Sequence record: NC_015287.1
Reading direction: 5' to 3' (one strand)
Length of the DNA: 64,000 bases
Each line of letters opens with the position of its first letter. Position 1 is the stretch's first letter. This document shows, one piece after another, positions 46,263-53,513 of this stretch. A model generated the notes under the pieces. That model worked only from the letters and a program-made list of their open reading frames with translations, searched no databases and had not been told where the DNA came from. A program made the translations under genes and the position numbers.

Positions 46263-46330
46263 GTGTTGATTTCAACACTTTTCCGACCCGCTAACCAAGA
46301 CCTATGGGTCGTTAAATTACGTCTTTATCT
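46263..46330 (+). ncRNA. PhotoRC-II-like psbA leader RNA (pseudoknot)
   Basis: CGACCC (46284-89) pairs GGGTCG (46306-11); AAGAC (46297-301) pairs GTCTT (46321-25), an H-type pseudoknot; hairpin GTGTTGA/TCAACAC before it. Confidence 0.65.
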
Positions 46331-46361
46331 TACTCAAAATAAACATCGCACTTTTTTTCAA

Positions 46362-47543: not shown

Positions 47544-47615
47544 GGGACTATCGCATATTGGTTAATGCCCTCTGCTTATAACGGAGTGAACCGAGTTCAA
47601 TTCTCGGTAGTCCTA
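47544..47615 (+). tRNA. trnI-UAU: tRNA-Ile (anticodon TAT)
   Basis: Acceptor GGGACTA/TAGTCCT; anticodon arm CTCTG-CTTATAA-CGGAG; T arm CCGAG-TTCAATT-CTCGG; no encoded CCA. Confidence 0.88.
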
Positions 47616-47618
47616 CTT

Positions 47619-47692
47619 GCCACTTTAGCTCAGTTGGATAGAGCAACGCATTTGTAATGCGTAGGTCGTCGGTTCAAGTCCGACAAGTGGCT
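47619..47692 (+). tRNA. trnT-UGU: tRNA-Thr (TGT)
   Basis: GCCACTT/AAGTGGC; ACGCA-TTTGTAA-TGCGT; TTCAAGT loop. Confidence 0.93.
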
Positions 47693-47696
47693 CCTT

Positions 47697-47770
<74 letters not shown>

Positions 47771-47774
47771 CCTT

Positions 47775-47858
47775 GGGAGTGTGGTGGAATCGGTAGACAC
47801 ACCAGACTTAAAATCTGTTGACAGCAATGTCGTGGGGGTTCAAGTCCCCCCACTCCCA
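47775..47858 (+). tRNA. trnL-UAA: tRNA-Leu (TAA)
   Basis: GGGAGTG/CACTCCC; CAGA-CTTAAAA-TCTG; long variable arm GAC..GTC; no intron. Confidence 0.92.
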
Positions 47859-51551: not shown

Positions 51552-51581
51552 TTGACTAAATATAAGTATATGTGTTATAAT
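51552..51581 (+). promoter_or_regulatory. Promoter driving riboswitch locus
   Basis: TTGACT-N18-TATAAT (TG extension) with embedded TAAATA at 51557-62. Confidence 0.6.
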
Positions 51582-51588
51582 TAACACA

Positions 51589-51654
51589 ATCGTTCATCCC
51601 CCAAGTTGCCTTAGGCGACCAAGTGGGACGCAAGTAAGCCGACACGGAACGGAT
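51589..51654 (+). ncRNA. Glutamine-II (Downstream-peptide) riboswitch-like aptamer 1
   Basis: CGTTCATCC...GGGACGCAAGTAAGCCGACACGGAACGG; P1 CGTTC/GAACG, P2 TCCC/GGGA. Confidence 0.75.
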
Positions 51655-51837
51655 CGTTCATCCTATGATTGATGTTTTACTCTACATGTCTTTAAGCTGC
51701 GAAGATACGGCTGATATGATCAGACGTATCCGAGAGAAGGATAATGTGAGTGCGCTGATTCAGACGGAGCTTGTTGATGTACTTCAAGAAGCAACGCCTG
51801 AGTGTTCATGGGACGCAAATGCCGACTGAAGGAACGG
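51655..51837 (+). ncRNA. Glutamine-II riboswitch-like aptamer 2 with ORF-sized P2 loop
   Basis: CGTTCATCC (51655-63)...GGGACGCAAATGCCGACTGAAGGAACGG (51810-37); P2 TCCTATG/CATGGGA. Confidence 0.7.
51665..51829 (+). CDS. 54 aa protein nested in aptamer 2 (absent from ORF track)
   Basis: MIDVLLYMSLSCEDTADMIRRIREKDNVSALIQTELVDVLQEATPECSWDANAD*. Confidence 0.65.
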   Translation: MIDVLLYMSLSCEDTADMIRRIREKDNVSALIQTELVDVLQEATPECSWDANAD

Positions 51838-51875
51838 AGTTTTTACAAACCCCTACTACTTACAGGAGAAACCAA

Positions 51876-52019
51876 ATGGCTAAGGTCACATACAGAGGAG
51901 TCTCTTACGACTCTGAAGAGTACAACGCAAAGGTACTCAAAGAAGCTGCTCAGAAGCAACGTCACGAACTTATGTATCGTGGTATCAAGGTGGAACGCAA
52001 GTTCGCATCTAAGAGCTGA
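51876..52019 (+). CDS. DUF4278-like small basic protein
   Basis: MAKVTYRGVSY...LMYRGIKV (two YRG motifs); RBS AGGAG. Confidence 0.8.
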   Translation: MAKVTYRGVSYDSEEYNAKVLKEAAQKQRHELMYRGIKVERKFASKS

Positions 52020-52050
52020 TGATCAGTTGACAAATACATACTTGTCGTTT

Positions 52051-52077
52051 AACCTCTACATATTGTAGAGGTTTTTT
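52051..52077 (+). terminator. Rho-independent terminator
   Basis: AACCTCTACA-TAT-TGTAGAGGTT-TTTT. Confidence 0.8.
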
Positions 52078-52100
52078 AATGTCACGAAATAAAAACTAGA

Positions 52101-52176: not shown

Positions 52177-52533
52177 ATGAAAGCATTCGCAGTTGCCCTG
52201 CTCGGTTTAGGATTCATTCCTTCCGCAATCGCAGGTCCGTATGTATCCACTAAAACCGAATTTAAAGGTGACGAAGATGGATACTCAAAGATGGTTAACC
52301 AAGCAAGAATTGGTACAACTTTTAAAGTAGGATCATTAAAACCATATATTGAAGCTGGTGGTGGTATTGTATCACCAGATGGTAAAGATGCAGAAGGATT
52401 CCAAGTAATCGAAGTTGGTTCTAAGTTTAAACTTACTGACTCACTTGCTGCAAAAGCAAAGTTTGAGCATAAGTGGGAACCAGACTCAGAAAGAGACTGG
52501 AAATTTGAAGTCGGCACTAAGTACAAATTCTAA
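52177..52533 (+). CDS. Small outer-membrane beta-barrel-like protein (DUF680/PhCOG173-like), copy 2
   Basis: Signal peptide ending AIA|GPYV; YIEAGGG; C-terminal KYKF; directly upstream of pstS. Confidence 0.7.
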   Translation: MKAFAVALLGLGFIPSAIAGPYVSTKTEFKGDEDGYSKMVNQARIGTTFKVGSLKPYIEAGGGIVSPDGKDAEGFQVIEVGSKFKLTDSLAAKAKFEHKWEPDSERDWKFEVGTKYKF

Positions 52534-52535
52534 TC

Positions 52536-53513
52536 ATGAAAAAAGCACTCTTAATCGCAGCTGCCATCGCAACTGCTGTAATCACTCCACTTAACTTAGC
52601 AGTGGAAGCAAGAACAAGACTGAGTGGTGCTGGTGCATCATTCCCATCTAAAATCTATAGTCGTTGGTTTTACGACTTAGCAAAAGAGAAAGGACCTAGA
52701 GTTAACTATCAGGCAGTTGGATCTGGTAGTGGTCGTAAGGCATTCATTGATCAGACAGTAAACTTCGGTGCATCTGATGATCCTATGAAAGATAAGGACA
52801 TTGCTAAAGTAAAACGTGGTCTAGTTCAAATTCCTATGACAGGTGGAACTATTGCCTTTGGTTATAACAATCCTGGCTGTGATCTTAAATTGACACAACA
52901 ACAGGCAGTTGAAGTTGCAATGGGTATCATTTCTAACTGGAAGGAAGTTGGATGTGATGATCAGAGAATGGTTTGGGCACATAGATCTGATGGATCTGGA
53001 ACTACCAAGGCATTCACTAGTAGTATGAAAGCATTCTCTCCTACTTGGACTCTAGGAACAGGTAAATCTGTAGCGTGGCCAGTTGGAGTTGGTGGTAAGG
53101 GTAATGCTGGTGTTGCTGGTATTATTAAGAATACACCAGGCGCTATTGGTTATGTGAACCAATCTTATATTGATGACACTGTTAGAGCAGCAGCACTTCA
53201 AAACTTGAACGGTGAGTTTCTAAAACCATCTGTTGAAGCAGGAGCAAAGGCACTCAATGGTATTGAGTTAGATGAGAATCTTGCAGGGACAAATCCAAAT
53301 CCAACAGCAGAAGGAGCATATCCGATTGCTACATTGACTTGGATACTTGCATATGAAACTGGTAATGGTAGAAATACCAAAGCAATCAAAACATCTCTAT
53401 CAACTCTATTGAGTGATGAGTATCAGGATAAAGCACCTAAACTAGGATTCGTTCCTTTGAAGGGTGAGATTCTTGAGAAGGCAAGAGCTGCTGTAGAGAG
53501 GATAGGGAAATAG
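52536..53513 (+). CDS. pstS: Phosphate ABC transporter periplasmic binding protein
   Basis: GAGASFP, YQAVGSGSG, FGASD, HRSDGSGTT, GGKGNAGV, AIGYV, YPIATLTWIL. Confidence 0.96.
   Translation: MKKALLIAAAIATAVITPLNLAVEARTRLSGAGASFPSKIYSRWFYDLAKEKGPRVNYQAVGSGSGRKAFIDQTVNFGASDDPMKDKDIAKVKRGLVQIPMTGGTIAFGYNNPGCDLKLTQQQAVEVAMGIISNWKEVGCDDQRMVWAHRSDGSGTTKAFTSSMKAFSPTWTLGTGKSVAWPVGVGGKGNAGVAGIIKNTPGAIGYVNQSYIDDTVRAAALQNLNGEFLKPSVEAGAKALNGIELDENLAGTNPNPTAEGAYPIATLTWILAYETGNGRNTKAIKTSLSTLLSDEYQDKAPKLGFVPLKGEILEKARAAVERIGK

What the first reader, a model, noticed from the sequence alone, without database searches (positions are those of the whole stretch)
51589..52019. Tandem glutamine-riboswitch-like aptamers, the second wrapped around a whole ORF, controlling a DUF4278-like peptide
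Seen: the motif CGTTCATCC...GGGACGCAA.GCCGAC..GGAACGG occurs twice back to back. In copy 1 the P2 insert is a short hairpin. In copy 2 it spans about 140 nt and holds a 54-codon ORF. The ORF's AUG lies inside P2 (TCCTATG 51661-67 pairs with CATGGGA 51807-13), its last codons W-D-A-N-A-D-stop are the aptamer 3' strand, and its only SD-like GGA lies in the 3' end of aptamer 1. Known: Downstream-peptide/glutamine-II riboswitches precede DUF4278 peptides in picocyanobacteria, and a related aptamer controls the glutamine synthetase inactivator IF17. Inference: translation of the nested ORF and folding of aptamer 2 exclude each other, giving a two-stage glutamine-sensing circuit by which the phage could tune host nitrogen assimilation. 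I cannot confirm whether this nesting has been described.
Basis: partly seen in the sequence, partly recalled or inferred. Interest (0 to 1): 0.85.

Follow-up and report, generated by a model that had tools for sequence, protein, structure and literature searches.

The report
Glutamine riboswitch folded around a gene
In this marine cyanophage, and in hundreds of its relatives, one of two back-to-back glutamine-sensing RNA switches is split so that a whole small protein gene sits inside it; this layout appears undescribed and ties translation of that gene to nutrient sensing.

Summary
The window is Synechococcus phage S-SSM7. Positions 51552-52079 form one early transcription unit: promoter, compact glutamine aptamer, second aptamer split around a 54-codon gene (SSSM7_289, cluster GC430), DUF4278 peptide gene, terminator.

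All 83 loci fetched through the nested protein have this layout. A second, linker-anchored sample has 73 wrapped and 42 compact versions.

The long-range helix P2, which holds the AUG, covaries: 4 of 6 pairs change on both sides, and no shuffle matched the score. The nested gene is truly coding. Its last four codons, which are aptamer core, use one codon each in 60 of 60 genes.

In Syn9, P-HM1, S-TIM5 and others the first aptamer also encloses a gene; all four compact/wrapped combinations occur.

Compact aptamers with the same halves score 33.9-39.4 bits on Rfam RF01739 (threshold 35).

I found no description of this nesting. The 2022 tandem-riboswitch survey excluded arrangements with intervening ORFs.

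Glutamine binding and the regulatory logic (DUF4278 on, nested gene off at high glutamine) are inferred. This is a new variant of a known riboswitch class.

The parts
51552..51581 (+). Sigma-70-type promoter: TTGACT, 18-nt spacer, TGnTATAAT. The -10 hexamer (51576-51581) sits in the loop of an inverted repeat, GTGTTA/TAACAC 51572-51587.
   Evidence: 11 of 12 hexamer matches, with TG before the -10; the same promoter occurs in 123 distinct junctions. The -10 ends 6-10 nt before CGUUCA in 118 of them. The inverted repeat has covarying arms in 96% of junctions, against 5% of shuffles.
51591..51652 (+). Aptamer 1, compact, position-1 subtype. P1 is CGUUC 51591-95 with GAACG 51647-51. P2 is 51597-51600 with 51625-51628, and its loop holds a hairpin. 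The linker is CGCAAGUAAGCCGACAC.
   Evidence: RF01739 25.4 bits and RF01704 22.7 bits, both below threshold; conserved in relatives.
51647..51659 (+). Possible junction hairpin GAACG-GAU-CGUUC. It joins the P1 3' strand of aptamer 1 to the P1 5' strand of aptamer 2 and excludes P1 of both.
   Evidence: present in the MFE and centroid folds; the spacer is 3-6 nt in 175 distinct junctions, and the hairpin is worth -3.9 to -5.2 kcal/mol. Its function is inferred.
51655..51668 (+). Aptamer 2, 5' half: P1 5' strand CGUUC 51655-59, then P2 5' strand UCCUAUGA 51661-68, which contains the nested start codon.
51665..51829 (+). Nested gene SSSM7_289 (T4-like cluster GC430, phrog_504), 54 codons. It occupies the P2 loop of aptamer 2. 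The predicted protein is a two-helix hairpin with two invariant Cys; its function is unknown.
51806..51837 (+). Aptamer 2, 3' half: P2 3' strand UUCAUGGGA 51806-13, core and linker CGCAAAUGCCGACUGAAG (with the nested stop UGA at 51827-29), then P1 3' strand GAACG 51832-36 and G 51837.
   Evidence: synonymous sites frozen; compact proxies reach the RF01739 threshold.
51826..51865 (+). Candidate expression-platform hairpin. Linker CUGAAG 51826-31 pairs with CUUACAG 51859-65, which abuts and overlaps the Shine-Dalgarno of the DUF4278 gene.
   Evidence: the hairpin is predicted in all 46 short platforms, and A opposite C is never seen.. Whether this is the OFF state is inferred.
51864..52019 (+). 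Shine-Dalgarno AGGAG 51864-68 and the DUF4278 (IF17-like) peptide gene SSSM7_290, 51876-52019, 47 aa with two YRG motifs.
   Evidence: PF14105, 29.2 bits against a cut-off of 25.3.; phrog_5049.
52051..52079 (+). Intrinsic terminator: 10-bp stem followed by a T run.

Best explanation
Positions 51552-52079 are a self-contained early transcription unit that T4-like cyanophages share. The mRNA starts at or within a few bases of the first nucleotide of a tandem pair of glutamine-riboswitch aptamers. These aptamers are a phage-specific minimal variant.

Shown:
- Aptamer 2 is a complete aptamer whose P2 helix is closed over about 150 nt. A real protein-coding gene forms the P2 'loop'.
- The gene's AUG lies in the 5' strand of P2.
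- Its last codons are the 3' strand of P2 plus the ligand-binding core and linker.
- Its stop codon lies 3 nt before the P1 3' strand.
- Either aptamer of the pair can carry such a gene.

Inferred from the validated type I and II switches, which are translational ON switches for IF17/DUF4278 genes:
- At high glutamine both aptamers fold. This pulls the linker CU(G/A)AAG out of a hairpin with the sequence next to the Shine-Dalgarno of the DUF4278 gene, so that gene turns on.
- At the same time the folded aptamers bury the AUG (in P2) and the SD-like GGA(G) (next to P1 of aptamer 1) of the nested gene, so that gene turns down.
- Ribosomes translating the nested gene must unfold aptamer 2. The switch therefore reads translation as well as glutamine.
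- The 3-6-nt junction lets the P1 3' strand of aptamer 1 pair with the P1 5' strand of aptamer 2. That would couple the two aptamers and sharpen the response.
For: Architecture:
- The window is S-SSM7. The two ORFs are annotated as conserved clusters GC430 and GC660.
- All 83 loci fetched by the nested protein have both aptamer halves in register.
- The linker-anchored scan gave 73 wrapped units (inserts of 138-195 nt) and 42 compact ones. Tandem layouts were c|W 46, c|c 23, W|W 20 and W|c 11.

Long-range P2:
- On 50 spliced aptamers, 4 of 6 pairs change on both sides. There are 57 double-change cells against 22.8 in shuffles (0 of 500 as high). The covariation score is 0.287 against 0.095 or less for slid controls.
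- Native partners beat swapped partners in 50,000 of 50,000 permutations.
- In wrapped upstream units, native ends give -14.7 kcal/mol against -9.9 for swapped ends (0 of 20,000). One example is a strand swap: L036 AUGGUAAC/GUUAUCAU against L078 AUGUUAUCAC/GUGGUAACAU.
- RNAfold recovers P2, the junction hairpin and the platform hairpin in the MFE and centroid structures.

Coding:
- Entropy by codon position is 0.72, 0.42 and 1.06. The gene is 53 codons in 78 of 84 copies, and the other frames carry 3-7 stops.
- The family has 746 clusters. The AlphaFold model has pLDDT 80, with two helices and a low-confidence tail.

RNA constraint on codons:
- D50, A51, N52 and D53 use one codon each in 60 of 60 genes. 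Interior invariant residues use 2-3 codons.
- All 120 top family members keep the tail or a minor variant of it.

Aptamer identity:
- The nucleotides that contact glutamine in the type II structure (C1:G40, G2:C39, G18, C19:G41; PMC6698751) are present in both units.
- Compact proxies score 33.9-39.4 bits on RF01739.

Platform:
- Linker base and pre-SD base combinations are UAA with U 31, UGA with C 27, UGA with U 7, and UAA with C 0. A opposite C is also absent from the second set.

Other:
- ON-switch precedent: PMC6212724.
- Junction spacer of 3-6 nt in 175 junctions.
- The variant is found only in phage sequence.
Against: - No ligand-binding or expression data exist for any of these RNAs.
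- Copy 1 and all position-1 aptamers score below the gathering threshold of both Rfam families.
- Neither subtype has the P3 hairpin of type I or a convincing type II P2 helix. Each carries only one half of the type I AGUA/GAA loop-E. Folding and affinity may therefore differ from the studied aptamers.
- P1 never varies, so covariation cannot test it. Both searches conditioned on parts of it.
- Within the close GC430 set, P2 shows only one-sided C-to-U changes (p = 0.17). The covariation comes from the wider family.
- The two platform sites lie 30-100 nt apart, so recombination of a linked block could mimic compensation. G.U is common in the second set.
- The platform hairpin has the topology of the type II P2 helix, so it could coexist with the bound state and not be the OFF state.
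- P2 may form without ligand, in which case repression of the nested gene would not depend on glutamine.
Confidence: 0.65

Rival explanations
1. Only aptamer 1 is a working sensor. The second CGUUCAUCC is a decoy strand that competes for GGAACG of aptamer 1, forming part of its expression platform for the nested gene. The distal GGGACGCAA...GGAACGG is a separate half-site or platform for DUF4278. No complete second aptamer ever forms.
For: The junction hairpin GAACG-loop-CGUUC is available in all 175 junctions and appears in the MFE fold. P1 of aptamer 2 cannot be tested by covariation.
Against: P2 covaries between the strand just 3' of the second CGUUCA and the strand just 5' of the distal ACGCAA, in the same register as in compact aptamers. 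Compact forms with the same two halves occur at the same position and reach the RF01739 threshold. Loci with no aptamer 1 still keep both halves around the gene (L070 and L072).
Confidence: 0.1
2. Copy 2 is the relic of a riboswitch broken by a gene insertion. The start-to-stop helix survives only as a ligand-independent translational or stability element for the nested gene.
For: The long-range helices in upstream wrapped units extend to about 20 nt, far beyond what an aptamer needs. They would hide the AUG whether or not ligand is bound.
Against: All core and ligand-contact nucleotides of both halves are invariant across more than 130 divergent loci, including synonymous sites. A relic should decay. 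The same core is read in two different frames, or left untranslated, in different nested genes, so the RNA motif is the constant feature.
Confidence: 0.08
3. The phage aptamers are real and fold as described, but they sense a ligand other than L-glutamine or have greatly altered affinity, because they lack P3 and split the loop-E motif between them.
For: Scores are below threshold for position-1 aptamers. Each subtype carries only AGUA or only RAAG.
Against: The nucleotides that contact glutamine in the solved structures are all kept. The regulated gene is the same DUF4278 family as in cellular glutamine riboswitches.
Confidence: 0.1
4. The 'nested ORF' is not translated. The 150-nt insert is a structured RNA domain.
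Against: There is codon-periodic variation, a fixed frame and length, stops in the other frames, conservative amino-acid replacements, two invariant Cys, and a confident helical-hairpin model. The fold of the region is no more stable than shuffles (z = -1.05).
Confidence: 0.03

Closest known systems
Glutamine riboswitch type I (glnA RNA, Rfam RF01739) and type II (Downstream-peptide, RF01704)
   Same: It has the same P1/PK strands (CGUUC/GAACG), an adjacent P2 stem starting with U-A and C-G pairs, the ACGCA core, and the glutamine-contact nucleotides. It precedes a DUF4278 (IF17-like) gene, as in cyanobacteria (PMC6212724, PMC6698751). It probably works as a translational ON switch.
   Different: It lacks the type I P3 hairpin and has no convincing type II P2 helix. 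The linker is a short conserved GCCGAC segment. Position-1 aptamers score below both thresholds. The P2 loop can hold a whole translated gene, and the core nucleotides double as its last codons. The variant is found only in phage sequence.
Tandem (pseudo-cooperative) glutamine riboswitches (Weinberg 2010, PMC2864571; Sherlock 2022, PMC9481103: 157 doublets and 4 triplets)
   Same: Two aptamers for the same ligand lie in one leader, upstream of one regulated gene.
   Different: That survey called a tandem only when no ORF intervened, and it discarded gaps over 300 nt. Here one or both aptamers enclose an ORF. The two positions hold fixed, different subtypes. The junction is always 3-6 nt, so the facing P1 strands can pair with each other.
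Two-piece glutamine-II aptamer (Huang et al. 2019, PMC6698751)
   Same: It shows that the aptamer can assemble from separated strands when glutamine is present.
   Different: That was an engineered split in the linker between two RNA molecules. Here the split is natural, lies in the P2 loop of a single mRNA, and the intervening RNA is translated.
Group I introns of T4-like phages with homing-endonuclease ORFs looped out of a peripheral helix (own knowledge)
   Same: A functional RNA fold is closed around a protein-coding insert in a loop, and translating the insert is incompatible with the fold.
   Different: Those are ribozymes, not ligand sensors. Their ORFs are mobile endonucleases that do not share codons with the catalytic core.
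Leader ORFs inside the Salmonella mgtA and mgtCBR Mg2+-sensing leaders (own knowledge)
   Same: Translation of an ORF embedded in a sensing leader RNA changes which structure forms.
   Different: Those ORFs are short leader peptides in the expression platform that report on proline or ATP status. Here the ORF is a conserved 50-66-aa protein lying inside the aptamer itself.

Membership tests
Glutamine riboswitch type I (RF01739) | P1 helix CGUUC/GAACG closing the aptamer | tested here: met
   Both units have the strands. They are invariant in all relatives. Because they never vary, pairing cannot be tested by covariation.
Glutamine riboswitch type I (RF01739) | P2 stem immediately 3' of CGUUCA and 5' of ACGCA/ACGGA | tested here: met
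   In copy 1 it is local: 4 bp plus a hairpin in the loop. In copy 2 it is long-range: 8 bp in the window, with a 5-bp core that covaries across 138-195-nt inserts.
Glutamine riboswitch type I (RF01739) | Score at or above the Rfam gathering threshold (35 bits) | tested here: inconclusive
   Copy 1 scores 25.4 bits and does not reach it. Copy 2 cannot be scored with its insert. Nine natural compact aptamers with the same halves score 33.9-39.4 bits, and five reach 35.
Glutamine riboswitch type I (RF01739) | P3 hairpin and the AGUA/GAA loop-E within one aptamer | tested here: not met
   A 6-9-nt unpaired linker (GCCGAC) replaces P3. AGUA occurs only in position-1 aptamers (100 of 101) and RAAG only in position-2 aptamers.
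Glutamine riboswitch types I and II | Nucleotides that contact glutamine: the C1:G40 pair, G2:C39 with the G18 triple, and the C19:G41 long-range pair (numbering of PMC6698751) | tested here: met
   All are present in both units by sequence. They are invariant in relatives.
Glutamine riboswitch types I and II | Selective binding of L-glutamine | not testable with these tools
   This needs in-line probing or ITC.
Glutamine-II riboswitch (RF01704) | Type II P2 helix whose loop carries GGAACGG; gathering threshold 33 bits | tested here: not met
   Copy 1 scores 22.7 bits and relatives score 25-32 bits. Around GGAACGG in copy 1 there is only a possible 3-bp CGA/UCG closure. The unit-2 linker/pre-SD hairpin has that topology, but with a 28-35-nt loop.
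Glutamine-II riboswitch (RF01704) | Located in the 5' UTR of a DUF4278 / YRG peptide gene | tested here: met
   (PF14105, 29.2 bits against 25.3); all loci have a YRG protein downstream.
Tandem pseudo-cooperative riboswitch (Sherlock 2022) | Two aptamers in one leader with no intervening ORF | tested here: not met
   A translated ORF lies inside aptamer 2. The c|c relatives do meet the definition.
Pfam DUF4278 (PF14105), downstream peptide | Score above the curated cut-off | tested here: met
   29.2 bits against 25.3. Relatives score 24.7-25.0 bits, just below it.

The most novel reading that the evidence does not exclude
Cyanomyoviruses use a modular 'gene-in-aptamer' riboswitch. Each aptamer of a coupled glutamine-sensing pair can enclose a small gene, and the gene's start codon, last codons and stop codon are themselves aptamer nucleotides. 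One short early mRNA would then give reciprocal output: the nested proteins at low glutamine or during co-transcriptional translation, and the IF17-like DUF4278 peptide at high glutamine. Ribosome traffic through the nested gene would act as a second input to the sensor. The split loop-E halves (AGUA in aptamer 1, GAA in aptamer 2) may join the two aptamers into one cooperative unit.
Probability: 0.35. Interest if true: 0.9.

Novelty: new variant of a known kind. Interest (0 to 1): 0.82.

Why it matters
Riboswitch aptamers are treated as compact non-coding domains, and covariance-model searches and tandem surveys are built on that assumption. Here a ligand-binding fold is closed around a translated gene and shares nucleotides with its codons. 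This design recurs across at least three cyanomyovirus lineages and hundreds of environmental contigs.

If it works as proposed:
- It is a natural device in which metabolite sensing and translation gate each other on one mRNA.
- It gives a clean case of dual RNA and protein constraint on the same nucleotides.
- It suggests that other riboswitch classes hide split members that current searches cannot see.
- It gives a concrete handle on how abundant ocean viruses read and perhaps manipulate host nitrogen status, through an IF17-like peptide and two families of unknown small proteins (phrog_504, phrog_6471).

Tried and rejected
- Rfam at gathering threshold found nothing in the region. Only the permissive scan found copy 1.
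- Covariation of P2 within the close GC430 set had no power: the stem is nearly invariant (p = 0.17). The wider linker-anchored sample was needed.
- I tested whether the two nested protein families (GC430/phrog_504 and GC429/phrog_6471) are paralogues. hhalign gave a probability of 1%, so I dropped the idea, despite their shared hydrophobic N-terminus and two Cys about 35 residues apart.
- Pfam gives nothing for the nested protein. A relative matched YciZ-like at 16.3 bits, far below that model's cut-off.
- PHROGs families exist for both nested proteins but have no known function.
- Fold search of the confident model found no PDB match better than E = 2.4. The only viral matches were uncharacterised cyanophage homologues.
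- The host-genome scan found only phage-like contigs in single-cell or MAG assemblies, plus chance hits lacking CGTTCA. I saw no evidence for a cellular origin of this variant.
- I miscounted the platform contingency table once through an index error and corrected it.
- The Syn9 transcriptome paper (Doron 2016) could not be read, so I have no TSS or expression evidence.
- I considered whether protein selection explains conservation of the 3' half, and rejected it. Synonymous sites are frozen, and the same motif is conserved where it is non-coding or read in another frame.
Full report
**Identity and context.** The window matches Synechococcus phage S-SSM7 (NC_015287) at 100% identity. In that record the nested ORF is SSSM7_289 ('T4-LIKE GC: 430') and the downstream ORF is SSSM7_290 ('GC: 660'). 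A carbamoyltransferase gene lies upstream. A cyanophage outer-membrane-protein-like gene and pstS lie downstream. The flagged region matches 211 phage records, all from Synechococcus or Prochlorococcus phages or marine viruses.

**The observation.**
- Copy 1 spans 51591-51652. P1 is CGUUC 51591-95 with GAACG 51647-51. P2 is 51597-51600 with 51625-51628, and its loop holds a hairpin.
- Copy 2 has its 5' half at 51655-51668 and its 3' half at 51806-51837.
- The 54-codon ORF (51665-51829) starts inside the 5' strand of P2. It ends with W-D-A-N-A-D-stop, which is encoded by the 3' strand of P2 plus the aptamer core and linker.
- The 3'-half pattern occurs exactly twice in 64 kb, against 0.04 expected.
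- Rfam finds nothing at gathering threshold. In a permissive scan copy 1 scores 25.4 bits on RF01739 (threshold 35) and 22.7 bits on RF01704 (threshold 33). Copy 2 cannot be scored because of its insert.
- The downstream peptide starts at 51876 and passes Pfam DUF4278 (29.2 bits against 25.3).

**A defined transcription unit.** A near-consensus promoter (TTGACT, 18 nt, TGnTATAAT; 51552-51581) precedes copy 1. An intrinsic terminator (52051-52079) follows the DUF4278 gene. In 123 distinct junctions from relatives the same promoter is present. Its -10 ends 6-10 nt before CGUUCA in 118 of them. The mRNA should therefore begin at about the first base of aptamer 1. This is inferred from spacing, and I have no TSS data.

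**Conservation of the wrapped layout.** I fetched 80 viral contigs through the nested protein. One of the two search peptides is itself aptamer-encoded, which is a bias. Counting the isolates S-SSM4, S-SSM5 and P-RSM1 as well, all 83 loci show the same pattern: the ORF starts in CGUUCAUC(C/U)(C/U)AUG and ends in UGGGACGCAAACGACU(A/G)AAGGAACGG.

A second sample was anchored only on the linker and the P1 3' strand, so it does not condition on P2, on the insert, or on the protein.

**The long-range helix is real.** Within the close GC430 set P2 is too conserved to test. Only C-to-U changes occur, all of which keep G.U pairs (permutation p = 0.17).

In the wider sample P2 covaries:
- Position 3 is C-G 41, U-A 8, U-G 6.
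- Position 4 is C-G 26, U-A 10, U-G 10, A-U 7, with 2 mismatches.
- Position 5 is A-U 33, U-A 12, U-G 5, C-G 3, with 2 mismatches.
- Native partners beat swapped partners in every one of 50,000 permutations.

I also ran the pair-count tool on 50 spliced aptamers, with the ORF interior replaced by GAAA. Four of 6 P2 pairs change on both sides. There are 57 double-change cells against 22.8 in shuffles (0 of 500 as high). The covariation score is 0.287, against 0.095 or less for every slid control.

In coding terms, the codon just before the tail changes (W UGG, K AAG, R AGG, E GAG, I AUA), and the bases just 5' of the AUG change to match. P-HM1 is a cultured example, with UCCUUA/UAAGGA.

P1 never varies, and both searches conditioned on parts of it, so P1 is untested. 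RNAfold of the window leader places the long-range P2 in both the MFE and the centroid structure.

**The first aptamer can also enclose a gene.** In 23 of the protein-anchored loci and 31 of the linker-anchored loci, the position-1 aptamer is wrapped around a 65-68-aa ORF (GC429, phrog_6471). Examples include Syn9 (gp196), S-CAM1, S-CAM3, Syn19, P-HM1 and S-TIM5.

In these units the first and last roughly 7 codons pair with each other. Native ends give -14.7 kcal/mol, against -9.9 for swapped ends (0 of 20,000 permutations). L036 and L078 show a strand swap: AUGGUAAC/GUUAUCAU against AUGUUAUCAC/GUGGUAACAU.

Different nested genes meet the aptamer core in different ways. Some stop before it. 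Others read it in one of two frames: GRK-stop or WDAND-stop. So the RNA motif is the constant feature.

All four layouts occur: c|W 46, c|c 23, W|W 20, W|c 11.

**The nested ORF is a gene, and its end is RNA-constrained.**
- Variation follows codon position (0.72, 0.42, 1.06). The length is 53 codons in 78 of 84 copies. The other frames carry 3-7 stops.
- The family has at least 746 clusters at 90% identity, none with a functional name.
- An AlphaFold model has mean pLDDT 80. It is a two-helix hairpin with a low-confidence C-terminal tail. No informative structural neighbours were found.
- Interior invariant residues use 2-3 codons each. D50, A51, N52 and D53 use one codon each in 60 of 60 genes.
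- All 120 top family members end in the tail or a minor variant of it.

**Is it a glutamine aptamer?** The nucleotides that contact glutamine in the type II crystal structure, and the long-range C:G pair, are present in both units (PMC6698751).

Natural compact aptamers with the same halves as copy 2 score 33.9-39.4 bits on RF01739, and 5 of 9 reach the threshold. Position-1-type aptamers score about 27-28 bits.

The variant has no type I P3 hairpin and no convincing type II P2 helix. The two positions are fixed subtypes: AGUA occurs only in position 1 (100 of 101) and RAAG only in position 2. In the type I consensus these two motifs sit in one aptamer, and I recall them as the loop-E pairing. 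Binding was not testable here.

The variant is essentially phage-only. A scan of 185,579 species genomes gave nine hits. Three sit on phage-like contigs in marine single-cell or MAG assemblies. Six are chance hits without CGUUCA.

**Likely mechanism (inferred).** Both validated glutamine riboswitch types are ON switches for IF17/DUF4278 genes. The type I model is release of an anti-RBS pairing made by nucleotides at the aptamer 3' end (PMC6212724).

Here the linker CU(G/A)AAG holds the nested stop codon and abuts the P1 3' strand. It can pair with CUU(U/C)AG at the edge of the DUF4278 Shine-Dalgarno.
- The hairpin is predicted in all 46 short platforms.
- Base combinations are A-U 31, G-C 27, G.U 7 and A/C 0. 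A/C is also absent in the second set.
- Caveats: the two sites are close enough to recombine as a block, and the hairpin could instead be a type II-like helix that coexists with the ligand-bound state.

The two aptamers are always 3-6 nt apart (175 junctions). The P1 3' strand of aptamer 1 can therefore pair with the P1 5' strand of aptamer 2 (-3.9 to -5.2 kcal/mol). That structure excludes P1 of both aptamers and would couple them.

In the folded state the nested AUG is in P2, and the SD-like GGA(G) adjoins P1 of aptamer 1. A ribosome terminating at the nested stop covers the P1 3' strand.

I therefore propose reciprocal control, with the nested gene down and DUF4278 up at high glutamine, and with translation as a second input. 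The architecture is shown. The direction and the coupling are inferred.

**Novelty.** Tandem glutamine riboswitches and their presence in cyanophages are known (PMC2864571, PMC9964418, PMC9602691). The 2022 survey lists 157 doublets and 4 triplets. It defined tandems by the absence of intervening ORFs and discarded long gaps (PMC9481103). Covariance models also cannot span the insert.

I found no paper describing a gene inside the aptamer. Subscription literature was not searchable. I rate this a new variant of a known kind.

Noticed in passing
window 51572-51587; also L005-L207: The -10 hexamer of the promoter sits in the loop of an inverted repeat whose arms covary between phages (GGUCU/AGACC, GAGU/ACUC, GUCAUG/CAUGAC; window GTGTTA/TAACAC). 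In 96% of 123 junctions it folds at -3 kcal/mol or better, against 5% of shuffles. If the TSS is downstream of the -10, the 5' arm is not transcribed, so this is either a DNA-level feature or a hairpin in read-through transcripts. It is unexplained.
   Followed up: partly
window 51629-51652 and 51814-51837; all tandem loci: The two aptamers are fixed, different subtypes. AGUA occurs only in position 1 (100 of 101) and RAAG before GGAACG only in position 2. In type I both motifs lie in one aptamer. This may be an inter-aptamer loop-E contact, which is untested.
   Followed up: partly
proteins P0087, P0089, P0104: These are natural 108-aa fusions. The linker stop UGA has become UGG, so the nested ORF reads in frame through the aptamer 3' end and the platform into the DUF4278 peptide (...DAKAD-W-RNGSNPPYLEVKP-MAQVTYRGV...).
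   Followed up: no
L003 810-850, L013, L036, L044, L059, L062, L085 1105-1140: Some phages, including Syn9 and S-SSM5, have an optional stable hairpin with covarying stem and tetraloop between aptamer 2 and the DUF4278 Shine-Dalgarno (GGAUCCUCC-GAAA-GGAGAGAAGGUU, CUGC-UUCG-GCAG and others).
   Followed up: no
L070, L072: These two contigs have the GC430-wrapped aptamer with no upstream aptamer. It directly follows an unrelated ORF of at least 135 aa, so a single wrapped unit can exist alone.
   Followed up: no
window 46273-46350 and 47544-47858: There is a PhotoRC-II RNA (44.2 bits, threshold 39) and a cluster of four tRNA genes. These are other known cyanophage RNA elements in the same window.
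   Followed up: no
L135 1071-1268, L194 4460-4657: A manA RNA (168-175 bits) lies 200-300 nt from compact|compact glutamine aptamer tandems in some viral contigs.
   Followed up: no
window 52177-53513: Just downstream of the module are a cyanophage outer-membrane-protein-like beta-barrel gene (PF24653, 109.6 bits) and pstS. This puts the nitrogen-sensing module next to a phosphate-acquisition gene.
   Followed up: no
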